36,528 nucleotides of DNA from Macrostomum lignano (GCA_002269645.1 NIVC01004736.1:1-36528), one strand, 5' to 3'; numbered from the stretch's first letter, positions 7,629-33,636 are shown. Made by a program: numbers and translations. The notes: generated from the sequence alone by a model not told the origin.

Positions 7629-7743
7629 ACCCTAACCCTAACCCTAACCGGAACCCTAACCCTAACCGGAACCCTAACCCTAACCGGAACCCTAACCCTA
7701 ACCGGAACCCTAACCCTAACCGGAACCCTAACCCTAACCTAAT
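7629..7743. repeat. Interstitial telomere-like array: (CCCTAA)2-CCGGAA 18-bp unit
   Basis: CCCTAA hexamers with every third hexamer replaced by CCGGAA, about 6 units. Confidence 0.9.
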
Positions 7744-9590: not shown

Positions 9591-10287
9591 CTGTGAGAAA
9601 CCTGCTATAGATTCTGTGAGAAATCTGCTATAGATTCTGTGAGAAATCTGCTATAGATTCTGTGAGAAATCTGCTATAGATTCTGTGAGAAATCTGCTAT
9701 AGATTCTGTGAGAAATCTGCTATAGATTCTGTGAGAAATCTGCTATAGATTCTGTGAGAAATCTGCGATAGATTGTGAGAAATCTGCTATAGATTCTGTG
9801 AGAAATCTGCTATAGATTCTGTGAGAAATCTGCTATAGATTCTGTGAGAAATCTGCTATAGATTCTGTGAGAAATCTGCTATAGATTCTGTGAGAAATCT
9901 GCTATAGATTCTGTGAGAAATCTGCTATAGATTCTGTGAGAAATCTGCTATAGATTCTGTGAGAAATCTGCTATAGATTCTGTGAGAAATCTGCTATAGA
10001 TTCTGTGAGAAATCTGCTATAGATTCTGTGAGAAATCTGCTATAGATTCTGTGAGAAATCTGCTATAGATTCTGTGAGAAATCTGCTATAGATTCTGTGA
10101 GAAATCTGCTATAGATTCTGTGAGAAATCTGCTATAGATTCTGTGAGAAATCTGCTATAGATTCTGTGAGAAATCTGCTATAGATTCTGTGAGAAATCTG
10201 CGATAGATTGTGAGAAATCTGCTATAGATTCTGTGAGAAATCTGCTATAGATTGTGAGAAATCTGCTGGGTTCTGTGAGAAATCTGC
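9591..10287. repeat. 23-bp minisatellite CTGCTATAGATTCTGTGAGAAAT (about 30 copies)
   Basis: Near-perfect tandem array read directly from the sequence. Confidence 0.95.
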
Positions 10288-11040
10288 TAGAATGTGGTAG
10301 AAATCTGCTAGAATGTGGTAGAAATCTGCTAGAAACCTGCTAGAAATCTGCTAGAAATCTGCTAGAGATCTGCTAGAAACCTGCTAGAAATCTGCTAGAA
10401 ATCTGCTAGAAATCTGCTAGAAATCTGCTAGAAACCTGCTAGAAATCTGCTAGAAATCTGCTAGAAATCATGTAAAAATCTACTAGAAATCTGCTAGAAA
10501 TCTGCTAGAGATTTGCTAGAAACCTGCTAGAAATCTGCTAGAAATCTGCTAGAAACCTGCTAGAAATCTGCTAGAAATCTGCTAGAAATCTGCTAGAAAT
10601 CTGCTAGAAATCTGCTAGAAATCTGCTAGAAATCTGCTAGAAACCTGCTAGAAATCTGCTAGAAATCTGCTAGAAATCATGTAAAAATCTGCTAGAAATC
10701 TGCTAGAAATCTGCTAGAGATTTGCTAGAAATCTGCTAGAAATCTGCTAGAAACCTGCTAGAAATCTGCTAGAAATCTGCTAGAAATCTGCTAGAAATCT
10801 GCTAGAAATCTGCTAGAAATCTGCTAGAAATCTGCTAGAAATCTGCTAGAAATCTGGTAAAAATCTGCTAGAAATCTGCTAGAAATCTGCTAGAAATCTG
10901 CTAGAAATCTGCTAGAAATCTGCTAGAAATCTGCTAGAAATCTGCTAGAAATCTGCTAGAAATCTGCTAGAAATCTGCTAGAAATCTGCTAGAAATCTGC
11001 TAGAAATCTGCTAGAAATCTGCTAGAAATCTGGTAAAAAT
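10281..11040. repeat. 11-bp minisatellite CTGCTAGAAAT (about 68 copies)
   Basis: Tandem array directly abutting the 23-bp array. Variant blocks recur 209 bp apart. Confidence 0.95.
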
Positions 11041-11783
11041 TCTGCAAAGTGCCGGATTTTCTGAGAATTTTCCGGAATGAATCAAACTGCACAGGGTGGA
11101 CGCTGCATTGAGAAATTGTGCATCGCGCCGACGTCAAAGGTGGCTCCGCAGTAAAGTGATAATCCGGGATTTATGACTGTCCGCCGTCTGGATCAAATTC
11201 TGAGGACCCAAGTTAAAAATTTACAATCGCCGCGGCCGTATAAAATGCATTAAAAATGCCATTGCCAGTTGGCAAGCCAGTGGGATTTTGTCCTGCCCAA
11301 AGAGATAGGAAATCGCGATGCTATTAGGCTGACTTGCTTTTGCTCTGCGGGCAATCCTCCTCAGCAAGGCGGCAACTCACCTTGTCGGCGCCTGTGAGTC
11401 TATCGATGAAGAACGGGAGAGAGGCTGAGTGAGTGTGAGGAGCGGGCCGCGGACCGCCAACTCTGGCGGCAGGGAATTCAACTAAACTGCGTCCCCTGCT
11501 CCAGCATGCAGTGCGGACCCCGCGTCAGCCCTCCAAATAGAAATCCCTCGCCTACATCTCCTACAAATTGCGCGGGACAGCCAGGGACTTCTAGCGGGAA
11601 TGAACATCTGGACTAGAAACCTGTATAACGTTAACTTGAAAGTGGCATGGACCCGGGCACCGCCAAACAACTGATTTGCCAGGGGGGGGGCATGAGTCCA
11701 GCTTGACGGCAATATGTCAACTTGTTGACCTCCCATTTTCACTGAAGGGGAGGCAGCTGACCCCTTTGTCCTCCCCCGTTCAG

Positions 11784-15980: not shown

Positions 15981-18900
15981 TCAGAGCTCCGCTGTCAAGG
16001 CGCCTGCATCAATGGCCAGTCGGCCAACACTCGGACAGGCCACGCTGCGTCCGGCCAGCTCGGACAGGCCGGGGCCGGACAGGTCGCACACGTGCCACAG
16101 CTCGCTGGCCGTGCTGTCCTCCAGCCCGATCTTGATGAGCAGCTGGCGCAGCCGGGAGTCCCGGCGGCCGGCCTCCAGCCACAGGCGGACCGGCCGGACA
16201 GGCAGGCAGGTGAGCAGCAGCCGACCAAAAAGCCGGCGGAGGTTGGCCGCGTTCAGCAGGGCGCAGCCGCGGGCCGGACAGCTCGGCCGAACCGCCTCCA
16301 AGTCGGCCTGGAAAGCGTTTAAGGGAAGCGTGCGAATCAGAGCTGAGCTGGGTACATAGTGCCAGCCAATCAGAGCTGAGCTGGGTACATAGTGCCAGCC
16401 AATCAGAGCTGAGCTGTGTACATAGTGCCAGCCAATCAGAGCTGAGCTGGGTACATAGTGCCAGCCCACCAGAGCTGAGTTGGGTACAGAGCCAGCCAAT
16501 CAGAGCTGAGTTGGGTACATAGTGCCAGCCAATCAGAGCTGGACTGGGTACATAGTGCCAGCCAATCAGAGCTGGACTGGGTAGATGGTGTGAGCCAATC
16601 AGAAATCTAGAAATCTCACCTGAGCCACAGGGCCGTCCCACATGCAGTAGGTCAGAGCGACGGTGCCCTGCAGGCGGCAGTCGCAGGCCGCGCAGGTCAG
16701 GGCGAACCGCCGCCCAGTCTCCAGCTTGCCCGACAGCCGGCCGCCGCAGTCCCGCAGCTCCAGGTGGAGGCCGGCGGGCAGCGGCCGGCGACCCGCCTGC
16801 AGAGTTGAAGTGATAAACTTCGGCGGCCACAGCTCGAAGAAGCCGATGTTCTCCGTCTCGGTTAGAAAATCGAACCCCAGACGTCTGTAGCAGTTCACGG
16901 CTGGCGCGTTGCTGTGCTGCACCAACAGCTTCAGGTGGCCGAAGCCGGAGGAGGCGGCGAGGCGGCCCAGCGTGGCCAGCAGCGACTGGCCGACCTGCGG
17001 GAGGGCCGGTGCGGGTCTGGTTGGTTGTATGGGATATTTATGGCTTCTTAATATGCCCCGTGCTACCGTGGGGTTCAGTGGGGTATTTTGGGATGCAGTG
17101 GGGTATTATGGAATGCAGTGGGGTATTCTGGGGTGCAGTGGGGTATTTTGGGGTGCAGTGGGGTATTATGGAATGCAGTGGGGTATTATGGAATGCAGTG
17201 GGGTATTCTGGGGTGCAGTGGGGTATTTTGGGGTGCAGTGGGGTATTATGGAATGCAGTGGGGTATTATGGAATGCAGTGGGGTATTATGGGGTGCAGTG
17301 GGGTATTATGGAATGCAGTGGGGTATTTTGGGATGCAGTGGGGTATTATGGGGTGCAGTGGGGTATTATGGGGTGCAGTAAGGTATTATGGAATGCAGTG
17401 GGGTATTTTGGGATGCAGTGGGGTATTATGGAATGCAGTGGGGTATTATGGGGTGCAGTGGGGTATTATGGGGTGCAGTGGGGTAATATGGGGTGCAGTG
17501 GGGTATTATGGAATGCAGTGGGGTATTATGGGGTGCAGTGGGGTATTATGGGGTGCAGTGGGGTAATATGGGGTGCAGTGGGGTAATATGGGGTGCAGTG
17601 GGGTAATATGGGGTGCAGTGGGGTATTATGGAATGCAGTGGGGTATTCTGGGGTGCAGTGGGGTATTATGGGGTGCAGTGGGGTATTATGGAATGCAGTG
17701 GGGTATTATGGAATGCAGTGGGGTATTATGGAATGCAGTGGGGTATTTTGGGATGCAGTGGGGTATTATGGAATGCAGTGGGGTATTATGGAATGCAGTG
17801 GGGTATTATGGGGTGCAGTAAGGTATTATGGAATGCAGTGGGGTATTTTGGGATGCAGTGGGGTATTATGGGGTGCAGTGGGGTATTATGGGGTGCAGTG
17901 GGGTAATATGGGGTGCAGTGGGGTATTATGGAATGCAGTGGGGTATTATGGGGTGCAGTGGGGTATTATGGAATGCAGTGGGGTATTATGGAATGCAGTG
18001 GGGTATTTTGGGATGCAGTGGGGTATTATGGAATGCAGTGGGGTATTATGGAATGCAGTGGGGTATTATGGGGTGCAGTAAGGTATTATGGAATGCAGTG
18101 GGGTATTTTGGGATGCAGTGGGGTATTATGGGGTGCAGTGGGGTATTATGGGGTGCAGTGGGGTAATATGGGGTGCAGTGGGGTATTATGGAATGCAGTG
18201 GGGTATTATGGGGTGCAGTGGGGTATTATGGGGTGCAGTGGGGTAATATGGGGTGCAGTGGGGTATTATGGAATGCAGTGGGGTATTATGGGGTGCAGTA
18301 AGGTATTATGGAATGCAGTGGGGTATTTTGGGATGCAGTGGGGTATTATGGAATGCAGTGGGGTATTCTGGGGTGCAGTGGGGTATTATGGGGTGCAGTG
18401 GGGTAATATGGGGTGCAGTGGGGTAATATGGGGTGCAGTGGGGTATTATGGAATGCAGTGGGGTATTATGGGGTGCAGTGGGGTATTATGGGGTGCAGTG
18501 GGGTATTATGGAATGCAGTGGGATATTATGGAATGCAGTGGGGTATTATGGGGTGCAGTGGGGTAATATGAGATGCTGTTTCTTACAGTAAAATGTGGGA
18601 TATCCTGGGGTCGCAGCGAATTTATGCCACAGCCCCAAATAGAAGTTCATTCACAGTGCATTCACAGTGCATTCACAGTGCATTCACAGTGCATTCACAG
18701 TGCATTCACAGTGCATTCACAGTGCATTCACAGTGCATTCACAGTGCAATCACACAGAGGGACGCCTCACCTGGTGCCTGCGGTACAGCGGCTCAACGTA
18801 CAGGCTCTGTACGTAGAAGCCCGGCTCAGCGTGCCGCAGCAGGTAGGAGGGGGTGTACAGCAGGTATCCGATGACGCGGCCCTCGGCCTCGGCAACCATA

Positions 18901-19094
18901 ATCCTGAACAGGCCGTCCATGAGCATCTGGCGGTGCGCCTCGCTGCCCAGCCTGCAGTACTGCAGCATGTTTTCGTGACACTTGGCCAGCTCTTTCTCGT
19001 GGCAGGTCACCTGGTACATGTCATCCGGCGTGCCGTAGCGGATCACCACGGTGGCGGTGGAGGATTCGGGCTTCATGGCTGCTGGCAGCTGCAT
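15981..19094 (-). CDS. Tandem double-GNAT SSAT-like acetyltransferase, copy D (3 exons, about 335-341 aa)
   Basis: Exons 19094 (or 19076)-18771, 16994-16620 and 16307-15981, all phase 0. Junctions are CAG|GTGAGG, CCGCAG|GTC, CAG|GTGAGA and TTTCCAG|GCC. Motifs: IRYGTPDD, VIGYLLY, FYVQSLYVEPLYRRHQ|VGQSLL, SNAPAVNCYRRLGF, and in the second domain CDCRL..YCMWDG..ADL..ELW. Confidence 0.85.
16335..16602. repeat. 33-bp minisatellite in intron 2 of copy D (about 8 copies), each full unit with AGCCAATCAG
   Basis: Unit AATCAGAGCTGAGCTGGGTACATAGTGCCAGCC. Confidence 0.9.
17068..18571. repeat. 20-bp minisatellite GGGGTATTATGG(AA/GG)TGCAGT (about 75 copies) in intron 1 of copy D
   Basis: Long tandem array with recurrent variants (AAGG, TTTT, AATA). 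Confidence 0.95.
18648..18748. repeat. 11-bp repeat TTCACAGTGCA (about 9 copies) in intron 1 of copy D
   Basis: Perfect tandem array. Confidence 0.95.
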
Positions 19095-19130
19095 GAATTC
19101 GGGGTGGCGGTGAAATATATGGCTGCTGCT

Positions 19131-19373
<243 letters not shown>

Positions 19374-19746
19374 GCCTACACTTACTGCCCACTAAAGCTT
19401 TACGAAAAAGTAAAAATAAAAGGATACCAAAGAAACAAATCGGGATAAAAAAACAGATAAAAAGGTGAATTAAAAAATCTAATTCATTCTGTAATCATTG
19501 TCAAGAAAAATCTGCTCAAAGGAATGATCTCAGGATTATCGAGCGAATAAAAAAACTGGTTGGAAAAGCACTTGATGAACTGTAAACGAAGACAGCTGGC
19601 TTGATTGAAGTAAAGGTAAAACACATCGCAATCGCAAATCGCAATACAGTAAGAAAGTCGCAATACAAATTAATTATGAAGAAATATGGACAGTGCAAGT
19701 CTGTAGTAGCTGCAAGCTTTCAGTATTAAAGCCTGTGTCACAGAAA

Positions 19747-20024
19747 GACAGTATTACAGACTGACAGTATTATTACAGACTGACAGTATTACAGACTGAC
19801 AGTATTATTACAGACTGACAGTATTACAGACTGACAGTGTTACAGACAGACAGTATTACAGACTGACAGTATTACAGACAGACAGTATTACAGACTGACA
19901 GTATTACAGACTGACAGTATTACAGACTGACAGTATTACAGACTGACAGTATTACAGACAGACAGTATTACAGACTGACAGTATTACAGACAGACAGTAT
20001 TACGGACTGACAGTATTACAGACT
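19747..20024. repeat. 16-bp minisatellite ACAGAC(T/A)GACAGTATT (about 17 copies)
   Basis: Tandem array ending 2 nt from the stop codon of copy C. Confidence 0.95.
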
Positions 20025-20026
20025 GG

Positions 20027-21134
20027 CTACACGGCAACCAGGATGTTGCTGTCGACCTGCCGCTCCGCCAGGCCGCAGAGCTGGGCGCCCCGCAGCGCGC
20101 AGACGACCCAGTCTCCGTCGTGGCGGCCGTCCAAGTCCTCCAGTCCGGTGTGCAGCAGCATCCGGTGCAGCTCGGTCTGCTGCCGAGGCGCCTCCAGCCA
20201 AAGCCGCCTTGGCGACGCAGCCAGGCTGAGTGCCAGGCGGCCCAGCAGCCGCTTCAGATTGGCGACGCTCAGCAGCTGGCAGGGCCGCTGGGCGCAGGCG
20301 GGCCGCACCAGCCGCAGGTCGGCCAGCATGATGCAGCCGTCCCACATGCAGTAGGTGAGCGCCGCGGTGCCCTGAAGGCGGCAGTCGCAGGCCGCGCAGG
20401 TCAGGGCGAACCGCCGCCCGGCCTCCAGCCCGCCCGACAGCCGGCCGTCGCAGTCCCGCAGCTCCAGGCTGAGGCCGGCGGGCAGCGGCCGGCGACCCGC
20501 CCGAAGCATCGAGTTCACGAACTTGGCCGGCCACAGCTCGAAGAAGCCGATGTTCTCCGTATCGCTCAGGAATTCGAACCCCAGACGTCTGTAGCAGTTC
20601 ACGGCCGGCGCGTTGCTGCGCTGCACCAGCAGCTTCAGGTGGCCGAAGCCGGAGGAGGCGGCGAGGCGGCCCAGCGTGGCCAGCAGCGACTGGCCGACCT
20701 GCGGCAGGTGGGGATGTAGATGGATGATGAGGCTCAGGATTAAATAATTCCCATTTGCAATCAGTGACAACTCGCAGCATCCCTGACCCGGTACTCACCC
20801 GGTGTCTCCGGTAAGCCCCGTCAACAAAGAGGCTCTGCACGTAGAGGCCTGGCAGGTCCTGCTGGGACACGTGAGACACGGTGTACAGGACGAAGCCCAC
20901 AATCCGGCCGGTTGCCATAGCAACCGCGACCAGCAGCCTGAGCAGGCCGGCCAGCATCATGAGGCGGTGCTCGACGGCGCTGCAGCGGCTGTACAGCTGC
21001 ATGCCGTCATGGCAGGCTGCCAGCTCCTCCTCCAGCTCGGCGGCCTCCAGGAGGTCCTCCGGGGCGCCCTGCCTGATGAGCAGCGCTGGCTGGGCCGGCT
21101 GGCCGCAACTGCCAGTCACCATGGCAACAGACAT
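20027..21134 (-). CDS. Tandem double-GNAT SSAT-like acetyltransferase, copy C (2 exons, 335 aa)
   Basis: Exons 21134-20799 and 20698-20027 with a 100-nt phase-0 intron (CGG|GTGAGT ... CCGCAG|GTC). Motifs: IRQGAPED, IVGFVLY, LYVQSLFVDGAYRRHR|VGQSLL, AVNCYRRLGF, and in the second domain YCMWDGCIMLADL, GDW. Confidence 0.88.
20911..20924. promoter_or_regulatory. RFX X-box-like motif GTTGCCATAGCAAC within exon 1 of copy C
   Basis: Matches the RFX consensus GTNRCC-N(0-3)-RGYAAC. Binding is untested. Confidence 0.4.
21115..21128. promoter_or_regulatory. RFX X-box-like motif GTCACCATGGCAAC at the start of copy C
   Basis: Consensus match centred on the second in-frame ATG (21122-21120). Confidence 0.45.
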
Positions 21135-21295
21135 TTTGCTGGAAAAGTTTTAGGGCAACGGATGCAGAAACGAATGAAAAGTTTTAGCCAGTAAATTTTT
21201 TAAAGCAAAATCTGGCCTAAATTTCACTGATCAGGTGCTCAAGATGTGTTCTGACAAGATCCTTTGAAAGCTGCATCCAAGACCCCGAAATATCA

Positions 21296-21604
21296 TACCA
21301 AAATATCCCACAATCTCCCTAAAGATCCCACAATCTCACTTCCTAAGGATCCCACAATTTCACTAAAAGATCCCACAATCTCACCCTAAAATATACCACA
21401 ATCTCACCCTAAAAGATCCCACAATCTCACCCTAAAAGATCCCACAATCTCACACTAAAAGATCCCACAATCTCACTGAAAAGATCCCACAATCTCACCC
21501 TAAAAGATCCCACAATCTCACCCTAAAAGATCCCACAATCTCACCCTAAAATATACCACAATCTCACCCTAAAAGATCCCACAATCTCACCCTAAAAGAT
21601 CCCG
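21296..21604. repeat. 23-bp minisatellite AAGATCCCACAATCTCACCCTAA (about 13 copies)
   Basis: Tandem array between copies B and C. Confidence 0.9.
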
Positions 21605-22356
21605 CACGACACCAGAGAGAACTGTAAAACATTGGCATAGCAGTGAAAATGATACAATCACTTGAGCAGACAAAAACACGAACGACAAACTGCAGTTTGC
21701 CACGCCTGTGTGGATAACATATCTAATGATATTTGATACAATAAAGCGATGCACTCAGCTAAAAAATATTACAATTTTCTAAGCTAATCAGACAAGTAAA
21801 TTTATTGCACAGCGCAGGATTTGTACTGCTTATGGTAATAAAATCTAATCAAAATAAAAGTACATCCGATTGGGGACAACGGGATAGTTGAATTGTTAAC
21901 AGTTGCATCAGACAGGTAGCAGGAAATTTATTTGGACAAAAGGCGGTTCCGCGAGCCCCGCGTCACTCTGCTTTCCCAATTCTGAGCTGCTTCTCAGACT
22001 CTGCACTTGAGGGCAAACAAAAGAATTTCTTACCGGTGCGGGGTAGGGGATTGAGACTTGGCAGTAGGATATAGCAGCAAGGTGTGGGATCTGGTCGCTA
22101 GCAATACGTACAATCAGTGTATATATATACTGTACAAAAGTACAAAAGCATTTTGAAGGGTTGCAATGTCCCGCAATCAAAGATGGAGAGCAGAGAGGCT
22201 AAAAAAGGTTTGCAAAAGAGTTTCTCTCACAACTTGAAATACAAAAAATATTGCCATTGCGTGAAAGAGCGTTCGATAGATAAAATCAGTACAACCAGAT
22301 TATAAACGCTGGGTTTAGTGCAAACTGCAAACAATACTGCAAATAAACTCAGCATC

Positions 22357-22901
22357 ACTGCTGAGCACACTACTGAGCACACTGCTGAGCACACGGCTGA
22401 GCACAGTGCTGAGCACACTGCTGAGCACACTGATGAGCACAGTGCTGAGCACACTACTGAGTACACTGCTGAGCACACTACTGAGCACACTACTGAGCAC
22501 ACTACTGAGCACACTGCTGAGCACACGGCTGAGCACAGTGCTGAGCACACTGCTGAGCACACTGATGAGCACAGTGCTGAGCACACTACTGAGTACACTG
22601 CTGAGCACACTGCTGAGCACACTACTGAGCACACTGCTGAGCACACTACTGAGCACACTGCTGAGCACACTGCTGAGCACACTACTAAGCACACTGCTGA
22701 GCACACTGCTGAGCACACTACTAAGCACACTGCTGAGCACACTGCTGAGCACACTGCTGAGCACACTACTAAGCACACTGCTGAGCACACTGCTGAGCAA
22801 ACTACTGAGCACACTGCTGAGCACACTGCTGAGCACACTACTGAGCACACTGCTGAGCACACTGCTGAGCACACTGCTGAGCACACTGCTGAGCACACTA
22901 C
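22357..22901. repeat. 12-bp minisatellite ACT(G/A)CTGAGCAC (about 45 copies)
   Basis: Tandem array whose last unit overlaps the TAG stop of copy B. Confidence 0.95.
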
Positions 22902-24193
22902 AGAATCGCAGGCGCAGCACAGTCGGCCTCAATCACAAAATGATCCGCGACTTGCCGCTCCGCCAGGCCGCAGAGCTGGGCGCCCCGCAGCGCGCAGACG
23001 ACCCAGTCTCCGTCGTGGCGGCCGTCCAAGTCCTCCAGTCCGGTGTGCAGCAGCATCCGGTGCAGCTCGGTCTGCTGCCGAGGCGCCTCCAGCCAAAGCC
23101 GCCTTGGCGACGCAGCCAGGCTGAGTGCCAGGCGGCCCAGCAGCCGCTTCAGATTGGCGACGCTCAGCAGCTGGCAGGGCCGCTGGGCGCAGGCGGGCCG
23201 CACCAGCCGCAGGTCGGCCAGCATGATGCAGCCGTCCCACATGCAGTAGGTGAGCGCCGCGGTGCCCTGAAGGCGGCAGTCGCAGGCCGCGCAGGTCAGG
23301 GCGAACCGCCGCCCGGCCTCCAGCCCGCCCGACAGCCGGCCGTCGCAGTCCCGCAGCTCCAGGCTGAGGCCGGCGGGCAGCGGCCGGCGACCCGCCCGAA
23401 GCATCGAGTTCACGAACTTGGCCGGCCACAGCTCGAAGAAGCCGATGTTCTCCGTATCGCTCAGGAATTCGAACCCCAGACGTCTGTAGCAGTTCACGGC
23501 CGGCGCGTTGCTGCGCTGCACCAGCAGCTTCAGGTGGCCGAAGCCGGAGGAGGCGGCGAGGCGGCCCAGCGTGGCCAGCAGCGACTGGCCGACCTGCGGG
23601 TTGCCAACCAGAGTTGCAGTTGGTCCAGCGAGATTTGGCGGCCCAATCACTGATGACCCGAATGAGGCAGCGGCCCAGTCACTGAGGACCCGAATGAGGC
23701 AGCGGCCCAGTCACTGAGGACCCGAATGAGGCAGCGGCCCAGTCACTGAGGACCCGAATGAGGCAGTGGCCCAGTCACTGAGGACCCGAATGAGGCAGCG
23801 GCCCAATCACTGAGGACCCGAATGAGGCAGCGGCCCAGTCACTGAGGACCCAAATGAGGCAGCGGCCCAATCACTGAGGACCCCAAGAAGCCTCACCCTG
23901 TGCCGCCGGTAGTCCAGCTCCACAAAGAGGCTCTGCACATAGAAGCCGGGCTCGGGCTGGCTGTGCATGTAAGACGGCGTGTACAGCAGGAAGCCGACCA
24001 CCCGGCCGGACTGGCAGTCGGCGGCGACCAGCAGTTTGAGCAGGCCGGCCAGCAGCATCCGGTGGTGCTCATCGCACTCGATCCGGCAGTACAGCTGCAT
24101 GCCATTGTGGCTGTTCGCCAGCTCCAGCTCCTGCGCGGCCACCGCCTCGATGTCGTCCGCCGTGCCGCGTCTAATTTGTATCTGAGTTTCCAT
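22898..24193 (-). CDS. Tandem double-GNAT SSAT-like acetyltransferase, copy B (2 exons, 330 aa)
   Basis: Exons 24193-23897 and 23593-22898 with a 303-nt phase-0 intron (AGG|GTGAGG ... CCGCAG|GTC). IRRGTADDI, ELA, VVGFLLY, FYVQSLFVELDYR, VGQSLL and NAPAVNCYRRLG are colinear with SAT1/SAT2 as recalled. Confidence 0.88.
23638..23882. repeat. 32-bp minisatellite GAGGCAGCGGCCCAGTCACTGAGGACCCGAAT (about 7.5 copies) in the intron of copy B
   Basis: Tandem array filling most of the intron. Confidence 0.95.
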
Positions 24194-24199
24194 GGCAAC
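24186..24199. promoter_or_regulatory. RFX X-box-like motif GTTTCCATGGCAAC over the start codon of copy B
   Basis: Canonical X-box form whose central CAT is the start ATG on the minus strand. Confidence 0.5.
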
Positions 24200-24347
24200 C
24201 GGCTGACTGCAAATGCGGGATGTTGTTAATAATAATAATTTTTTATTCTAAGCATTTTGACTTGTTAGGCGCAACAGCCTACTAAAAGTAGAATTAGCTG
24301 CAGACAGTAAATTTTGCGTGTATTGTGGTGAGTTAAATACGTCTTGC

Positions 24348-25312
24348 CATGGATGGGTCAAAAGAATCAAGGATGGGTCATAAGGGTCAATGATGGGTCA
24401 TGAGAATCAAGGAAGGGTCATAAGGGTCAATGATGGGTCATGAGAATCAAGGATGGGTCATAAGGGTCAATGATGGGTCATGAGAATCAAGGATGGGTCA
24501 TGAGAATCAAGGATGGTTCATAAGAGTCAAGGATGGTTTATAAGAGTCAAGGATGGGTCATAAGAGTCAAAGATTATTTATAAGAGTCAATGATGGGTCA
24601 TAAGAGTCAATGATGGGTCATAAGAGTCAATGATGGGTCATAAGAGTCAATGATGGGTCATGAGAATCAAGGATGGGTCATAAGGGTCAATGATGGGTCA
24701 TGAGAATCAAGGATGGGTCATAAGAGTCAAGGATGGTTTATAAGAGTCAAGGATGGGTCATAAGAGTCAAAGATTATTTATAAGAGTCAATGATGGGTCA
24801 TAAGAGTCAATGATGGGTCATAAGAGTCAATGATGGGTCATAAGAGTCAATGATGGGTCATGAGAATCAAGGATGGGTCATAAGGGTCAATGATGGGTCA
24901 TGAGAATCAAGGATGGGTCATAAGAGTCAAGGATGGTTAATAAGAGTCAAGGATGGTTAATAAGAGTCAATGATGGGTCATAAGAGTCAAGGATGGTTCA
25001 TAAGAGTCAATGATGGGTCATAAGAGTCAATGATGGGTCACAAGAGTCAATGATGGGTCATAAGAGTCAAGGATGGGTCATAAGAGTCAAAGATGGTTCA
25101 TAAGAGTCAATGATGGGTCATGAGAATCAAGGATGAGTCATAAGGGTCAATGATGGGTCATGAGAATCAAGGATGGGTCATAAGAGTCAAGGATGGTTCA
25201 TAAGAGTCAATGATGGGTCATAAGAGTCAATGATGGGTCATAAGAGTCAATGATGGGTCATAAGAGTCAAGGATGGTTCATAAGAGACAAGGATGGTTCA
25301 TTAGTCAAGGGT
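24348..25312. repeat. 20-bp minisatellite GAGTCAA(T/G)GATGGGTCATAA (about 48 copies)
   Basis: Tandem array with duplicated variant blocks (AAGATTATTTA at about 24570 and 24770). Confidence 0.95.
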
Positions 25313-25742
25313 CAAGAATCAAGGACATTGCATGTAATGTGAGGTAGGTTAGTGCCACAAAAAACTAAAACTTCTGTTAAGAAACAGGTTAAAGTCAGAA
25401 AATAAAGTTGAACATATTAAGGCACAGCAAGCGATCAGTTAGTAGAGTGCTTGATACGTTAAGAGAGCTACACTGGATTAGGCACAGCGCACTACTGTTA
25501 GAGCAATGTGTAAGTGTTAAAATTTAAGCATAAAAGGATATATTAAAACAGCGATTTAGTTTGAGCTGCTAAGCGATAGATCTGTGTTAAAGTTTGCATA
25601 AAAGATTACCAGAATAAGCGGAACCTACTCATAGTAGTATAGAAGTAAATCAAATACTGAAGATTAGCGTTGGTCCAACTGTAAAGTCAGGACTCGAACC
25701 CTAAGATGACCTGTGATCAGAGATAAGGAGATAATGAGTAAA

Positions 25743-26153
25743 CAGGACTCTCACAGTGGGGATCAGGACTCTCACATTGGGGATCAGGACTCTCACAATG
25801 GGGATCAGGACTCTCAAAGTGGGGATCAGGACTCTCACAGTGGGGATCAGGATTCTCACAATGGGGATCAGGACTCTCATAGTGGGGATCAGGACTCTCA
25901 CATTGGGGATCAGGACTCTCAAAGTGGGGATCAGGACTCTCACAGTGGGGATCAGGACTCTCACAGTGGGGATCAGGACTCTCACAGTGGGGATCAGGAC
26001 TCTCACAGTGGGGATCAAGACTCTCACATTGGGGATCAGGACTCTCACAGTGGGGATCAGAACTCTCACAGTGGGGATCAGGACTCTCACAGTGGGGATC
26101 AGGACTTTCACAGTGGGGATCAGGCCTCTCACAGTGGGGATCAGGACTCTCAC
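25743..26153. repeat. 21-bp minisatellite GGACTCTCACAGTGGGGATCA (about 19.5 copies)
   Basis: Tandem array ending 7 nt from the stop codon of copy A. Confidence 0.95.
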
Positions 26154-26160
26154 ATCTCTC

Positions 26161-27860
26161 TCAGTCAGACAGTGAATCCGGGCAGCCGGCCAGCTCCGGG
26201 TGCAGGCGGCAGTTCAGCGGCCTGTTGGCCAGCAGGTGCAGCGGCCGGCCGGCCAGCAGGCAGATCAGCCAGCCTTCATTGGCCGTGTTGTTCTCGAAGC
26301 CGGCGCGCATCAGCAGGTCATCGAGTCCGCCGGAAGTCGGTCGGTTGGCGACGGTGTCAACCCACACGATATGCGGCGACGGTAGGGTGGGCTTGTCGGC
26401 AGCGGCCAGCTGCAGCAGGCGGCCCATCAGGCACTTCAGCGAGGCGGAGCTGACGGCGCCGCACTCCGATGCGGCAGCGCAGACCGGCCTCTCGGCCGAC
26501 AAGTCGATCTGGGGGTTGGCAGTGGAAGCTGACGGGTTTCTGCATCTCCTGTGCTCAAGCCTCCTATGAGCACTCACCTGCACCGCCTCTCCCTCCCACA
26601 TGCAGTAGCTGAGCTCTCACCTGCACCGCCTCCCCCTCCCACATGCAGTAGCTGAGCTCTCACCTGCACCGCCTCCCCCTCCCACATGCAGTAGCTGAGC
26701 TCTCACCTGCACCGCCTCCCCCTCCCACATGCAGTAGCTGAGCTCTCACCTGCACCGCCTCTCCCTCTCACATGCAGTAGCTGAGCTCTCACCTGCACCG
26801 CCTCCCCCTCCCACATGCAGTAGCTGAGCTCTCACCTGCACCGCCTCCCCCTCCCACATGCAGCAGCTGAGCTCTCACCTGCACCGCCTCCCCCTCCCAC
26901 ATGCAGTAGCTGAGCTCTCACCTGCACCGCCTCCCCTCCCACATGCAGTAGCTGAGCTCTCACCTGCACCGCCTCTCCCTCTCACATGCAGTAGCTGAGC
27001 TCTCACCTGCACCGCCTCCCCCTCCCACATGCAGTAGCTGAGCTCGGAGGCGCCAAACAGGCGACAGTCGCAGCCGGAAGTCCGAAGTTCGAATCGCCTA
27101 CCGTCGGCGCCGTCGCAGGGCCGCAGGCGCAGGCTGGCTCCGTCTGGCAGCGGCTGCTCGGCTGCGGCCACCAGGCCAGCAACAAAGTCCACGTCATTCA
27201 TCTCAAAAAAGGCGACCCCCTCGGTCTCTGTGAGCACCTGGAAGCCAATGCGCTGGTACCAGGACAGAGCCTCGTTATCTGTGTGCACAATCAGCTTGAT
27301 GTGGTCGCAGCCGGTTGCCAAGGCCTGGCGAGCCAGAGCCACGAGTAGAGACTTGCCTACCTGCAAGTAGTAGTAGTATTAGTAGTAGTAGTTGTAGTAG
27401 CAGTAGTAGTAGCAGTAGTAGTAGTAGTAGTAGTATTAGTATTAGTAGTACTACTACTACTAGAAGTGTGCCTCTTATTACTACAAGTAGCTAGTTAAGC
27501 ACATCATAACAGCCTCACTGATCGCTCTCACCTTCAGCCCCGGTAGTCCTCGCACACGTACACAGCCTGCAGGTAGAGTCCTGGCCTAGGCTGCCTGTCC
27601 AGGTGGCACCGGGTGTACAGCGCGAATCCGGCCGGCCGTCCGGCTGCCTCGGCCACCAGAAGACGGGCCAGGCCGGACTGCAGCACCCGAAAGTGGTCGC
27701 TGGCGCCCATGTGGCAGAACGGCAGCATGCCCTCGTGGCTGACCGCCAAGTCGCGAACGCACAGCGCCACAAACTCCGCATCCTCCGCCGGCCTGCCGGG
27801 CCGCAGCTGCACCTGCCGTGGCAAATCAGCCGCCCTCGCCGTCGAGTCCTGCGTTTCCAT
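26161..27860 (-). CDS. Tandem double-GNAT SSAT-like acetyltransferase, copy A (3 exons, about 343 aa if a 1-nt deletion is corrected; otherwise a pseudogene)
   Basis: Exons 27860-27532, 27360-27007 and 26508-26161. Exon 1 is 329 nt and ends TAC CGG GGC TGA AG|GTGAG; one extra G gives YRGLK|VGKSLL, matching the paralogs. Other motifs: PAGFALY, DNEALSWYQRIGF, CDCRL..SYCMWEGE..|IDL, NEGW. Confidence 0.78.
26572..27045 (-). repeat. 43-bp tandem array made of the exon-2 3' end plus splice donor of copy A (11 copies)
   Basis: Minus-strand unit GAGCTCAGCTACTGCATGTGGGAGGGGGAGGCGGTGCAG|GTGA. CTCAC (plus strand) occurs at 26573, 26616, 26659, 26702, 26745, 26788, 26831, 26874, 26917, 26959 and 27002. 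Confidence 0.95.
27366..27462. repeat. (TAG)n/(TAC)n microsatellite in intron 1 of copy A
   Basis: Imperfect GTA run that flips to the TAC orientation at about 27450. Confidence 0.85.
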
Positions 27861-31914: not shown

Positions 31915-33636
31915 TCAAGGCTTCAACCGAGCGGAGCTCAGCAGGCCTTCGGACCGAAGCAGGCGGGCCTTCATGGACGACGGCGAGATCAGAAGCCGCG
32001 GCCAGCGCCGGCCGACTCCGCCGCTACCGCTGCCGCCGCTGCCGCCGCTGCCGCCGCCGTTCTGCCGACGAACTCCCCGAAGCCGGAGGGCGCGCAGGCT
32101 GTCGCGGGGCGAGAAGCCGCTGCCGCCGCCGCCGCTGGACGGCGACTCGTCGAATCCGCGGCGACCACCGCCAACTCGGCGACATCGCAGGAGGCGCCGT
32201 CGGCGAGAATCACCGGGACGGCACCGAGACGGCGGCGTCGACACTTCCAGACTGGACGGCGGGGAGGACGGCGAAGTCAGCGAAGGCGGCGAGGCAGAGC
32301 TGGACGAGCTGGGCGACTTTGGCGGTTCCTGGCCGCCAAGCCGGCTCAGCAGAAACTGCCGGAACCGCCGGCCCTCGGCGGCGTCGGGCTCGGCCGGGAC
32401 GGCGTCTGCAGCAACCGTCGCGGCGGGACTCTGCGCTGACGGACGGCGGCCGCCGATGAGCGGCGCGGCACGCCTGCCAGCGGCGGCGGCGGCCACCAGG
32501 TTGCGCAATGAGGTGGCCAACGGGGCCGAGCCGCCGCTGTCGACGATGCCGACGACGCCGAGAACGGAGATGCCTGGCCGCGCCGGCTGCCAGGGCTGCG
32601 CGAGCGCGACCTGCTGGCGAAGCGGCCGACAGCGGCTCGGAGGGCGGCAAAGGAGCCGCCGCTGCCGCTGCAGCTGCCGCTCCGTCCGCGCTTCCCAGCC
32701 TCAACAGCCGGAGGCGGAGGCTCCACCGCTGTCACCGAGTCGATGGCGCCGAGCGCTTGGTGATGCCGGACCAGCAAGGCGGCGGCGGCGTTCAGCCGGG
32801 CAACGGCGTCTCGAGGCGAAGCCGGCGGCAGCAACGGCGAGGCTGCGGAGGCGGCAGCCGCTGCGCCCACGTGTCGCAGAAGGCAGGGCCCGAGGCAGGT
32901 GGCCAGATTGTCAGCGTCCATGCGGTTGGAGGCGGAGTGCCGAGCCACCTGGCCAGGTGATTGATGGGGTTGAGAAAGGAGGAATTAATTAGAGTCAAAC
33001 AAAGGAATTGTTAGAGAACTGAAAAATCAGAAATGGAATTCGCAGCTGCCTCACCTTGGCCAGAAATTCGCACAGATGCCGCAGCGCCCGCAGTTGGCTT
33101 GGCGACACGGCCGGAGGTCGGCATCGCCGGCGCAGCAGGTCGCGAGCTCGAGCCCCATCGTCGTCGGCAACACCGACAGCGGCAGCCTCGGCGAGCTCCT
33201 GGGCGATCGCTGGCGGCAGCAGCGGCTCGGGCAGCTCGCGGAGCCACGCCTTCAGAGCGCAGGCGACGTCCCTCGGCGGCGTCGCTTCGCCGACCCCGGC
33301 GCCGGCATCGAGTTGACGACGCAGCTCGACGAGGCGCGACCGCGGCGCCTCAACGCGGAACAGGCCCTCGTCTGTCACGTGACTGGCCAGATGGTCACAG
33401 CAGGCGGCCAGGATGGCTGGCACCGCGCCAAGTCCCGGCACCTCCGTTGTTGGCTGCAGTTCCAATGGTCGGCCGAAAAACTTGCCGTCGCTAGAGACGC
33501 TGTTGCCATGGCAACAGAACGAACGCTGCAGCTGGTGCTGCTGGTTCAGCTTCGGCCGGCTTGGCAGGCGAAGCAGCCCGGCAAGAAACTGCGGAGGCTG
33601 CGCGGCTGACTTCTGCTTCATCAATGGCGACTCCAT
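31915..33636 (-). CDS. RhoGAP-domain protein, by eye closest to the ARHGAP11A family (2 exons; apparent 1-nt frameshift near 32530)
   Basis: Exon 33636-33055, intron 33054-32949 (AAG|GTGAGG ... GCCAG|GTG), exon 2 from 32948. Motifs: KFFGRPL, VPAILAACC, EGLFR (arginine finger), DVACALKAWLRELPEPLLP and NRMDADNLATCLGPCL. The frame of the C-terminal low-complexity tail is uncertain. Confidence 0.85.
33502..33515. promoter_or_regulatory. Perfectly palindromic X-box-like motif GTTGCCATGGCAAC in RhoGAP exon 1
   Basis: Exact RFX palindrome about 120 nt downstream of the predicted ATG. Confidence 0.4.

What the first reader, a model, noticed from the sequence alone, without database searches (positions are those of the whole stretch)
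15981..27860. Single-chain SSAT pseudo-dimers: two fused GNAT domains with complementary loss of active-site motifs
Seen: all four proteins (330-343 aa) contain two SSAT-like units. The N-domain keeps IR..T..D, GF.LY, the motif-A region (YRxxxVG.SLL) and N..A..(C/W)Y.R.GF with the catalytic-position Tyr. It lacks the YDPW/YSTW Trp and the C-arm Trp. The C-domain keeps YCMW(D/E)G, a following Asp (ADL/IDL) and the late Trp (GDW, ELW, NEGW; compare SAT1 EEGW). It has lost the acetyl-CoA loop and the Tyr. Known: SAT1/SAT2 are homodimers whose acceptor channel is built from both subunits. As I recall, Trp84 and Trp154 come from the partner subunit; this needs checking. Inference: a dimer became one chain with a single composite active site, possibly with changed substrate. 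Motif A lacks its first Gly, and the SAT1 LED Glu is Gln in all copies.
Basis: partly seen in the sequence, partly recalled or inferred. Interest (0 to 1): 0.9.

Follow-up and report, generated by a model that had tools for sequence, protein, structure and literature searches.

The report
Flatworm tandem double-GNAT acetyltransferase genes
Four neighbouring genes of the flatworm Macrostomum lignano each encode an acetyltransferase of the polyamine-acetylating (SSAT) type fused to a second, cofactor-less domain predicted to have the same fold; one-chain "double-GNAT" enzymes of this design are already known in other families.

Summary
Window 15981-27860 (minus strand) holds four tandem genes encoding 341, 335, 330 and 343 aa, and every quoted motif is present. 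The duplicated locus has the intact G5 run.

The N-half is an SSAT-family GNAT (Pfam 1e-12 to 1e-14; hhalign to SAT1 98%). It keeps the catalytic Tyr. SAT1 E28, E92 and D93 are replaced by His, Gln and Ser/Ala, and motif A lacks its first Gly.

The C-half has no clear-cut sequence similarity to anything outside M. lignano. Pfam and PDB searches found nothing, Smith-Waterman z is about 0, and only 5 hits appeared among 1.84 billion proteins. AlphaFold gives it a GNAT-like strand and helix order without α1/α2. Foldseek hits in two libraries are mostly GNATs (49 of 50 in PDB), at marginal E-values. One weak collinear hhalign match (P 0.0045-0.06) pairs its Trps with SAT1 W84 and W154.

The composite-site geometry could not be tested. 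Double-GNAT enzymes with one dead domain are known (NMT, HisAT/NAT16, MshD), so this is a lineage-restricted variant of a known kind.

The parts
15981..19094 (-). Gene 1 (341 aa). Exons 19094-18771, 16994-16620 and 16307-15981. The N-domain/C-domain boundary (AGRRPLP) is at 16796.
   Evidence: Splice sites and translation. The product equals P0004 (BOX15_Mlig013841g3) plus two N-terminal residues. Acetyltransf_1 E 1.3e-14 over residues 60-149.
20027..21134 (-). Gene 2 (335 aa). Exons 21134-20799 and 20698-20027. There is no intron inside the C-domain. The N/C boundary is at 20500.
   Evidence: 99.7% identical to P0001 (BOX15_Mlig017646g4). Acetyltransf_1 E 9.6e-13. This protein was the AlphaFold target.
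22898..24193 (-). Gene 3 (330 aa). Exons 24193-23897 and 23593-22898. The N/C boundary is at 23395. Exon 2 is identical to that of gene 2 over its first 641 nt.
   Evidence: The product equals P0002 (BOX15_Mlig012588g2), whose longest contig is 36528 nt, the length of this window.
26161..27860 (-). Gene 4 (343 aa if repaired). Exons 27860-27532, 27360-27007 and 26508-26161. In this window it is frameshifted. The N/C boundary is at 27165.
   Evidence: In-frame TGA at 27536-27534. The intact homeologous gene in L001 is annotated at 347 aa with GNAT Pfam hits.
27532..27548 (-). Site of the 1-nt deletion in gene 4. The window reads GACTACCGGGGCTGAAG|GT (G4); the duplicated locus has G5.
   Evidence: regex comparison of the window with L001. 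P0008 reads ...EDYRGLKVGKSLL.
20681..20813 (-). Gene 2 motif A (YRRHR|VGQSLL), split by intron 1. The first Gly of R-x-x-G-x-G is Arg here (Gln in gene 1, Lys in gene 4).
20576..20596 (-). Gene 2 CYRRLGF. Tyr148 aligns with the SAT1 catalytic Tyr140.
   Evidence: hhalign of the N-half against the SAT1 family, probability 98.2%, E 4.5e-14.
20832..20840 (-). Gene 2 VQS, at the position of SAT1 L91-E92-D93. The general-base Glu is Gln and the Asp is Ser.
20336..20353 (-). Gene 2 C-domain YCMWDG. Trp231 sits in the predicted β3-β4 turn and aligns with SAT1 Y81-D-P-W84-I-G86.
   Evidence: AlphaFold strands 219-229 and 233-243. hhalign collinear alignment.
20108..20116 (-). Gene 2 C-domain GDW. Trp309 starts the predicted β6 and aligns with SAT1 E-G-W154.
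26567..27045 (-). 43-nt minisatellite in gene 4 intron 2, built from copies of the exon 2 end plus its GTGAG donor.
   Evidence: Tandem Repeats Finder: 11.2 copies, 96% matches. Donor copies listed.

Best explanation
The region is a Macrostomum lignano-restricted tandem array of four paralogous genes, and the array is itself duplicated in the genome. Each gene encodes a double-GNAT protein of about 335 aa.

Shown:
- The N-terminal ~175 residues are an SSAT / thialysine-acetyltransferase-type GNAT domain. It has the acetyl-CoA motif region and the catalytic Tyr.
- The acidic residues that hold and deprotonate polyamines in SAT1 are replaced: E28 by an invariant His, E92 by Gln, and D93 by Ser or Ala. 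The Trps at positions 84 and 154 are also replaced.
- The C-terminal ~150 residues have seven invariant Cys. They have no cofactor loop and no catalytic Tyr.

Predicted:
- The C-half folds as a GNAT core (β1-β4, α3, β5, α4, β6) that lacks helices α1 and α2.

Inferred:
- The C-domain is a degenerate copy of an SSAT-like unit. It packs on the N-domain as the second subunit of the strand-swapped SSAT dimer does, or as the second half of known double-GNAT enzymes does.
- Only one of the two ancestral sites survives: acetyl-CoA and Tyr from the N-domain, and Trp231 and Trp309 from the C-domain.
- Because the channel has lost its acidic residues, the acceptor is probably not a polyamine but some less cationic amine.
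- The paralogues evolve fast, which fits diversifying acceptor specificity.
For: Gene models and transcript-based GenBank proteins. The annotation derives from RNA-seq.

N-domain:
- Pfam Acetyltransf_1 at 46-55 bits against a 20.7-bit cut-off.
- PDB hits: thialysine acetyltransferase 12jc at 5.5e-12, SAT2 at 2.8e-6, SAT1 at about 2e-3.
- Smith-Waterman z 17-20 against SAT1.
- hhalign 98.2% with the Tyr140 column conserved.

C-domain fold:
- In the full-length model the elements are E188-199, E203-213, E219-229, E233-243, H257-270, E277-283, H287-295 and E309-313, with 10-residue block pLDDT of about 65-88 over residues 181-300.
- The best Foldseek hit of the full model is the tandem-GNAT protein 2WPX, aligned over 361 columns.
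- For the C-half modelled alone, 49 of the top 50 PDB hits are GNAT folds and the other is the ornithine decarboxylase antizyme chain 4zgy_B. Most of the named BFVD hits are acetyltransferases.
- hhalign of the C-half against a broad SSAT profile scores 24.4 (P 0.0045), and 0 of 200 column shuffles reach that score. The alignment is collinear and pairs W231 with W84, D239 with D93, L293 with Y140 and W309 with W154.
- The first 50 residues of the C-domain are confident only when the N-domain is present (block pLDDT 68-88 against 37-46).

Other support:
- The SAT1 site is built from two subunits, with W84 and W154 from the partner, and the dimer is β7-swapped.
- The reading frame of the C-half is kept across dS 0.5-1.0.
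Against: - No clear-cut sequence evidence ties the C-half to GNATs: Pfam none, PDB none, pairwise z about 0.
- hhalign against the C-half's own N-half gives P 0.24, and against SAT1 orthologues alone P 0.53. With the setting -M first the broad-profile P is only 0.06.
- The AlphaFold alignments have only 3-4 sequences. Mean pLDDT is 62 for the full model and 53 for the C-half alone, and pTM is 0.45.
- Foldseek E-values for the C-half are 5e-4 to 3e-2 with TM 0.35-0.5.
- The domain orientation and the Trp positions were never measured.
- The N-domain lacks the Glu92 base, and the review cites the E92Q mutant of mouse SSAT as confirming that this residue is essential. It also lacks the first motif-A Gly, so it may be a poor enzyme or none.
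- dN/dS is high in both halves (0.49-0.79).
- Intron positions in the two halves do not correspond.
Confidence: 0.55

Rival explanations
1. The C-half is a lineage-specific Cys-rich domain unrelated to GNATs, for example a metal-binding or protein-interaction module. On this view the Trp and Asp 'motifs' are chance resemblances and the GNAT-like AlphaFold model is a default α/β guess.
For: - No Pfam or PDB sequence hit.
- Smith-Waterman z about 0.
- Only M. lignano hits among 1.84 billion representative proteins.
- Seven invariant Cys, against none in the N-half.
- Low pLDDT.
Against: - Two independent structure libraries return mainly GNAT folds.
- The full model aligns end to end with a tandem GNAT.
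- The order and lengths of the secondary-structure elements match the GNAT core.
- The collinear hhalign match beats 200 of 200 shuffles.
Confidence: 0.17
2. The C-half is GNAT-like, but the protein is not an SSAT-style composite-site enzyme. The second domain may only stabilise or regulate the first, or bind another ligand. Alternatively the whole protein may be a pseudoenzyme or binding protein, since the N-domain lacks the Glu92 base and the first P-loop Gly.
For: - E92 is Gln and D93 is Ser or Ala in all copies, and motif A reads R-x-x-(R/Q/K)-x-G.
- The review cites the E92Q mutant of mouse SSAT as confirming the essential role of Glu92.
- dN/dS is 0.5-0.8.
- The domain orientation is unresolved (pTM 0.45).
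Against: - Tyr140, the motif-A backbone region and the β4/β5 elements are kept in four paralogues that have diverged to dS of about 1.
- There is an invariant His at the E28 column that could replace the base.
- Two Trps are invariant at exactly the partner-subunit positions.
- In the known double-GNAT enzymes the second domain does shape the acceptor site.
Confidence: 0.23
3. The array consists of decaying or non-functional duplicates, and the apparent two-domain proteins have no selected function.
For: - The gene 4 frameshift in this window.
- High dN/dS.
- A repeat-ridden locus.
Against: - Three genes are intact here and all four are intact in the duplicated locus.
- Transcript-based models exist.
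- The frames are open over about 1 kb despite dS up to 1.0.
- About 50 residues of the C-half are invariant.
- The single indel lies in a G-run of a PacBio-based assembly.
Confidence: 0.05

Closest known systems
Spermidine/spermine N1-acetyltransferase family (SAT1, SAT2 / thialysine N-acetyltransferase, bacterial 2FE7 / 12JC-type, plant NATA1)
   Same: The N-domain is a clear sequence relative. It shares the catalytic Tyr, the motif-A region and the C-terminal arm. The proposed N/C packing copies the strand-swapped SSAT dimer, in which W84 and W154 of one subunit line the partner's site.
   Different: This is one chain instead of a homodimer. E28, E92 and D93 are replaced by His, Gln and Ser/Ala. 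The first motif-A Gly is missing. The second unit has no α1/α2, no cofactor loop and no Tyr, and it is unrecognisable by sequence.
Double-GNAT enzymes with an active N-domain: HisAT/NAT16 and N-myristoyltransferases
   Same: There are two GNAT folds in one chain. The N-domain binds acyl-CoA and the second domain has lost its cofactor residues. The active site lies between the domains. In HisAT the only substrate contact from the second domain is a Trp.
   Different: No sequence or top-50 fold match to NAT16 or NMT was found. The N-domain here is of SSAT type. The second domain is shorter (about 140 aa, no α1/α2) and Cys-rich. The family is restricted to one flatworm lineage, which implies an independent fusion.
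Mycothiol synthase MshD and the clavulanic-acid tandem GNAT (PDB 2WPX)
   Same: These are monomeric tandem GNATs in which one domain is catalytically silent yet forms part of the acceptor pocket. 2WPX is the best Foldseek hit of the full model.
   Different: [quoted passage not shown] The TM-score to 2WPX is only 0.32 (RMSD 19 Å), so the domain arrangement in the model is different or unreliable.
Ornithine decarboxylase antizyme C-terminal domain (4ZGY chain B)
   Same: It is the only chain among the top 50 PDB fold hits of the C-half that is not described as an acetyltransferase. From my own knowledge, not tested here, it is a cofactor-less domain with a GNAT-like fold from polyamine metabolism.
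   Different: There is no sequence relation. Antizyme is a free-standing regulator rather than a domain fused to an acetyltransferase.

Membership tests
GNAT superfamily (Pfam PF00583 Acetyltransf_1), N-domain | Profile match above the curated cut-off | tested here: met
   45.7-54.9 bits against a 20.7-bit cut-off for the three proteins scanned.
GNAT superfamily, N-domain | Motif A pyrophosphate loop Q/R-x-x-G-x-G/A | tested here: not met
   The loop is R-R-H-(R/Q)-V-G in genes 1-3 and R-G-L-K-V-G in gene 4. The first Gly is replaced in all copies and the second is kept.
SSAT / diamine N-acetyltransferase family, N-domain | Significant sequence similarity to SAT1 / SAT2 | tested here: met
   phmmer gives SAT2 2.8e-6 and SAT1 about 2e-3. 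Smith-Waterman z is 17-20. hhalign gives 98.2%, E 4.5e-14.
SSAT family, N-domain | Catalytic general-acid Tyr (SAT1 Tyr140) | tested here: met
   The Tyr of CYRRLGF / WYQRIGF aligns with Y140 and is invariant.
SSAT family, N-domain | General-base Glu92 and adjacent Asp93 (the LED motif) | tested here: not met
   VQS in genes 1-3 and LQA in gene 4.
SSAT family | Trp84 (β3-β4 turn) and Trp154 (β6) lining the acceptor channel | tested here: inconclusive
   The N-domain has Q/R and Ile at these columns. The C-domain has invariant Trps at collinear positions, but that alignment is only marginally significant (P 0.0045-0.06).
SSAT family | β7-swapped two-fold dimer with two composite sites | not testable with these tools
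   The oligomeric state and the strand swap need coordinates or an experiment.
Double-GNAT fold proteins (NMT, HisAT/NAT16, MshD, 2WPX, Eis) | A second GNAT fold in the same chain | tested here: inconclusive
   The predicted GNAT topology and the mainly GNAT Foldseek hits support it. However, the models have low confidence and the E-values are 5e-4 to 3e-2. No sequence-family hit was found.
Double-GNAT fold proteins | Only one domain keeps the acyl-CoA binding residues | tested here: met
   The C-half has RPxCx4-5C where the P-loop should be and Leu at the Tyr140 column. The N-half keeps both features.
Double-GNAT fold proteins | Strand exchange between the domains and an active site at the domain interface | not testable with these tools
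   This would need reliable inter-domain geometry. There is only an indirect hint: the first strands of the C-domain gain about 30 pLDDT points when the N-domain is present.
HisAT/NAT16 or NMT families specifically | Detectable sequence or closest-fold relation | tested here: not met
   Neither appears among the 60 listed PDB sequence hits or the top 50 fold hits.

The most novel reading that the evidence does not exclude
A recent, Macrostomum-specific conversion of a strand-swapped SSAT homodimer into a single chain, followed by exactly complementary decay. One unit keeps acetyl-CoA, Tyr and α1/α2. The other keeps only the partner-supplied Trps. This leaves one composite site whose acidic lining has been stripped, so the enzyme has moved from polyamines to a new acceptor, and the four paralogues are diversifying on it. 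It would be an independent origin of the double-GNAT design whose parent family (SSAT) is still recognisable from the N-domain sequence.
Probability: 0.3. Interest if true: 0.55.

Novelty: new variant of a known kind. Interest (0 to 1): 0.4.

Why it matters
Double-GNAT enzymes such as NMT, HisAT/NAT16, GLYAT and MshD are old. Their origin by fusion of a dimer can no longer be traced, and the HisAT study says as much. In this flatworm family the catalytic half is still plainly an SSAT-type domain, and the silent half still carries Trps at the columns that the partner subunit supplies in SAT1. If the fold and packing are confirmed, this would be a young, traceable example of dimer-to-monomer conversion with complementary loss of function. 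It would also be an SSAT relative whose acceptor is probably no longer a polyamine. For genome annotation, the practical gain is that the ~150-aa orphan C-terminal region of these 'hypothetical proteins' gets a structural assignment. If the fold is not confirmed, what remains is an ordinary lineage-specific GNAT gene expansion with an orphan C-terminal domain.

Tried and rejected
- Pfam on the three C-halves at E up to 10 gave no GNAT hit.
- A C-half profile and the single gene 4 C-half against PDB sequences gave 0 hits and 1 spurious hit respectively.
- hhalign of the C-half against its own N-half matched only an 18-column α4/β6 stretch, P 0.24.
- Smith-Waterman with 500 shuffles for the C-half against SAT1 and against the N-half showed no signal.
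- An exhaustive hmmsearch of the C-half profile against 1.84 billion representatives found only five M. lignano proteins, so no outgroup was available.
- Word-indexed searches with gene 2 and with the four-gene profile found only M. lignano proteins plus one bacterial GNAT-receiver fusion that matches the N-half.
- AlphaFold of the C-half alone was too uncertain (pLDDT 52.6) to stand alone.
- I looked for conserved intron positions between the two halves as a sign of internal duplication. The N-domain intron follows motif-A YRRHR, and the C-domain intron (genes 1 and 4 only) precedes β4. They do not correspond.
- The primary SAT1 structure papers (PMC1360125, PMC2518666, DOI 10.1073/pnas.0511008103) are not held. 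I used a preprint and a review instead.
- The gene identifiers are not mentioned in any searchable paper.
I used gene 4 without the two junction residues instead.
- A selenocysteine reading of the gene 4 TGA was rejected, because the homeologue simply has one more G.

Full report
**Origin and gene models**

The window is a 36,528-nt contig of the free-living flatworm Macrostomum lignano. Proteins encoded in it are identical or nearly identical to the GenBank models BOX15_Mlig013841g3, BOX15_Mlig017646g4 and BOX15_Mlig012588g2. One of these clusters lists a longest contig of exactly 36,528 nt. Reading the minus strand and its GT-AG junctions gives four tandem genes:

| Gene | Exons (window coordinates, minus strand) | Product |
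|---|---|---|
| g1 | 19094-18771, 16994-16620, 16307-15981 | 341 aa |
| g2 | 21134-20799, 20698-20027 | 335 aa |
| g3 | 24193-23897, 23593-22898 | 330 aa |
| g4 | 27860-27532, 27360-27007, 26508-26161 | 343 aa if repaired |

The GenBank annotation of this assembly was derived from RNA-seq-based transcript models, so g1-g3 are transcript-supported. In g2 and g3 the second half of the N-domain, the linker and the whole C-half lie in a single exon. The two-part architecture therefore cannot be a gene-model artefact.

In this window g4 is not open. Exon 1 ends ...GAC TAC CGG GGC TGA AG|GT, with an in-frame TGA at 27536-27534, and the spliced length is 1031 nt. A second copy of the whole four-gene array lies on the 459-kb contig NIVC01000731.1 (locus L001). 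It is collinear with the window and about 92-99% identical in the aligned blocks. There the run is GGGGG rather than GGGG, the gene is annotated at 347 aa, and a UniRef M. lignano protein reads ...EDYRGLKVGKSLL.... The assembly is PacBio-based and highly redundant because of karyotype duplication. The lesion is therefore either a homopolymer assembly error or a null allele of one duplicate. I added the missing G for protein analyses only.

**The N-terminal half**

Residues up to about 175 are an SSAT-family GNAT domain.
- Pfam Acetyltransf_1 scores 46-55 bits against a cut-off of 20.7.
- The best solved relatives are a thialysine acetyltransferase (12jc, 5.5e-12), Pseudomonas 2FE7, plant NATA1/2, human SAT2 (2.8e-6) and SAT1 (about 2e-3).
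- I checked my recalled human SAT1 sequence against PDB entry 2B4D and it matched 171 of 171 residues.
- Smith-Waterman scores of the four N-halves against SAT1 lie 17-20 standard deviations above shuffles.
- hhalign against a 76-sequence SAT1 alignment gives 98.2% probability, E 4.5e-14.

That alignment gives the following residue correspondences.

| SAT1 residue | N-domain equivalent |
|---|---|
| Tyr140 (catalytic acid) | kept: CYRRLGF / WYQRIGF |
| Arg101 and Gly106 of motif A | kept |
| Gly104 | Arg, Gln or Lys |
| Glu92-Asp93 (LED) | Gln-Ser or Gln-Ala in every copy |
| Glu28 | an invariant His |
| Trp84 | Gln or Arg |
| Trp154 | Ile |

One footnote: g1-g3 have a non-homologous Trp five residues further on (FFELW), which g4 lacks. 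The review of GNAT enzymes cites the E92Q mutant of mouse SSAT as confirming that Glu92 is essential. Either the chemistry here uses another base, for which the invariant His is a candidate, or the activity is low. The loss of three acidic channel residues argues against a polyamine acceptor.

**The C-terminal half: sequence evidence**

As sequence evidence for a second SSAT unit they do not stand up well.
- There is no Pfam hit at E up to 10.
- There is no PDB sequence hit for a three-sequence profile or for g4 alone.
- Smith-Waterman scores against SAT1 and against the protein's own N-half are indistinguishable from shuffles.
- hhalign against the N-half profile gives P 0.24, and against SAT1 orthologues P 0.53.
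- An exhaustive HMMER search of 1.84 billion representative proteins found five hits, all M. lignano gene models.

At the sequence level, then, the C-half is an orphan domain restricted to this lineage.

One weak positive came from a broader target profile made of the SAT1 orthologues, the four N-halves and a bacterial relative. It gave score 24.4 and P 0.0045, and none of 200 column-shuffled queries reached that score (mean 12.2, maximum 21.9). With a different match-state setting the P was 0.06. The alignment is long (114 columns) and collinear. It pairs TYCMWDG with TYDPWIG (W231 with W84) and D239 with D93. It also pairs LLHTGLED with FYKRRGASD (L293 with Y140), and DW with GW (W309 with W154).

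**The C-terminal half: fold evidence**

AlphaFold2 on g2 with the four paralogues as alignment gave mean pLDDT 62 and pTM 0.45. In the C-half it predicts E188-199, E203-213, E219-229, E233-243, H257-270, E277-283, H287-295 and E309-313, with 10-residue block pLDDT of about 65-88 over residues 181-300. This is the GNAT core order β1-β2-β3-β4-α3-β5-α4-β6, but with a short loop where helices α1 and α2 should be. In this frame Trp231 sits in the β3-β4 turn and Trp309 at the start of β6. Those are the same structural positions that the alignment assigns to SAT1 W84 and W154.

Foldseek gave the following results.
- For the full model, the best PDB hit is the tandem-GNAT protein 2WPX, aligned over 361 columns (E 3.9e-7, but TM 0.32 and RMSD 19 Å). 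It is followed by single GNATs, including mouse and human SSAT.
- The C-half folded alone is poor (pLDDT 52.6). Even so, 49 of its top 50 PDB matches are GNAT-fold proteins and the other is the ornithine decarboxylase antizyme chain 4zgy_B (E 1.7e-3 to 3e-2, TM 0.35-0.50).
- In the independent viral library most of the named hits are again acetyltransferases, with three hits below 1e-3.
- The first 50 residues of the C-half have block pLDDT of 37-46 alone but 68-88 in the full-length model. This hints that they pack against the N-domain.

I put the probability that the C-half is a GNAT-derived domain at about 0.8. I put the probability that it descends specifically from an SSAT-like unit at about 0.55.

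A docking and MD study on PDB 2B58 describes the SAT1 spermine site as lying at the A-B interface. Glu28, Tyr78, Tyr90 and the Glu92/Asp93 pair (numbered Asp92/Glu93 in the preprint) come from monomer A. Asp82, Trp84 and Trp154 come from monomer B. The GNAT review states that human and mouse SSAT dimerise by exchanging β7 strands. The recollection was therefore sound.

Mapping the flatworm residues onto that scheme gives two sites.
- Site 1 combines the N-domain cofactor site and Tyr with the C-domain Trp231 and Trp309. It keeps the cofactor, the acid and both Trps, but it has lost the acidic residues (E28 to His, E92 to Gln, D93 to Ser/Ala, and partner D82 to Cys).
- Site 2 has lost the cofactor loop, the Tyr, α1/α2 and both partner Trps.

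It is an inference from alignments.

**Comparison with known systems**

The design is not new in kind. Double-GNAT proteins are well described: N-myristoyltransferases, FemA/FemX, MshD, Eis, the 2WPX protein and, most recently, human HisAT/NAT16. In HisAT the N-domain binds acetyl-CoA. The second domain has lost the cofactor residues and the β-bulge. The last strands of the two domains are swapped. The substrate binds between the domains, and the only contact from the second domain is a Trp.

What differs here is the following.
- The parent family is of SSAT type.
- The second domain is small and lacks helices α1/α2.
- The second domain has seven invariant Cys.
- The distribution is extremely narrow.
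- The proteins are not detectably related to NAT16 or NMT.

I therefore rate it a new variant of a known kind.

**Evolution of the array**

Nei-Gojobori estimates give dN/dS of 0.49-0.72 for the N-halves and 0.64-0.79 for the C-halves, at dS of 0.3-1.0. Constraint is weak but similar on both halves, with open frames retained. Exon 2 of g2 and g3 is identical over 641 nt, while their first exons differ (dS 0.29). This indicates recent gene conversion or unequal exchange. The introns and spacers are filled with minisatellites, as expected for this genome.

**Verdict**

My best estimate is a lineage-specific double-GNAT acetyltransferase family with one functional site and a non-polyamine acceptor (confidence about 0.55). 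The main rivals are a C-domain unrelated to GNATs (0.17) and a GNAT-like but non-contributing domain or a pseudoenzyme (0.23).

Noticed in passing
window 26567-27045 (gene 4 intron 2, minus strand): A 43-nt minisatellite (11.2 copies) consists of copies of the last ~38 nt of exon 2 plus the GTGAG splice donor (...SYCMWEGEAVQ|GTGAG). It creates 11 candidate donors, at 27007, 26964 ... 26578. Only every third one would keep the reading frame.
   Followed up: partly
window 27532-27548: Gene 4 has GGGG where the duplicated locus L001 (position 2410) has GGGGG. This produces an in-frame TGA. It is either a homopolymer assembly error or a null allele in one duplicate.
   Followed up: yes
C-halves of all four genes (for example gene 2 residues 195-312, window 20452-20099): There are seven invariant cysteines: C195, the CDC motif at 216-218, C229 in YCMW, C247 and C252 replacing the P-loop, and C312. 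The N-half has no invariant Cys. A metal site or disulfides are possible, but this is unexplained.
   Followed up: no
window 20058-20698 and 22953-23593: Exon 2 of genes 2 and 3 is identical over its first 641 nt and then diverges near the stop codon, while the first exons differ (dS about 0.29). This points to recent gene conversion or unequal crossing-over within the array.
   Followed up: partly
L001 (NIVC01000731.1: 221518-242628) versus window 9600-29900: The whole four-gene array and its flanks are present a second time in the assembly, at about 92-99% identity. This is consistent with the known large-scale duplication in the DV1 line.
   Followed up: partly
window 5389-6921 (-): A 510-aa open reading frame encodes a major-facilitator transporter (Sugar_tr 5.7e-25, MFS_1 2e-20). 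It lies 9 kb from the acetyltransferase array. No link between the two was established.
   Followed up: no
window 32346-33636 (-): RhoGAP-domain coding exons (PF00620, 5.2e-18) lie in a very GC-rich stretch (63-68% GC).
   Followed up: no
window 1736-2422 (-): A 228-aa ORF has a sub-threshold QRICH1-domain match (4e-5, 24 bits against a 30.8-bit cut-off).
   Followed up: no
window 7634-7739: A perfect 18-nt tandem repeat, AACCCTAACCCTAACCGG (5.9 copies), is an interstitial telomere-like array.
   Followed up: no
window 17076-18576 (gene 1 intron 1) and 24351-25301, 9596-11045: Very long minisatellites are present: 20-mer x 75 copies, 20-mer x 47 copies and 11-mer x 130 copies. The first makes up most of the 1.8-kb intron that splits motif A of gene 1.
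   Followed up: no
P0008 (UniRef M. lignano protein) versus window 26508-26410: An alternative model of gene 4 joins ...EAVQ directly to LAAADKP. It skips 33 residues that correspond to predicted β4, the P-loop position and the start of α3 of the C-domain. This is either an alternative acceptor or an annotation artefact.
   Followed up: no
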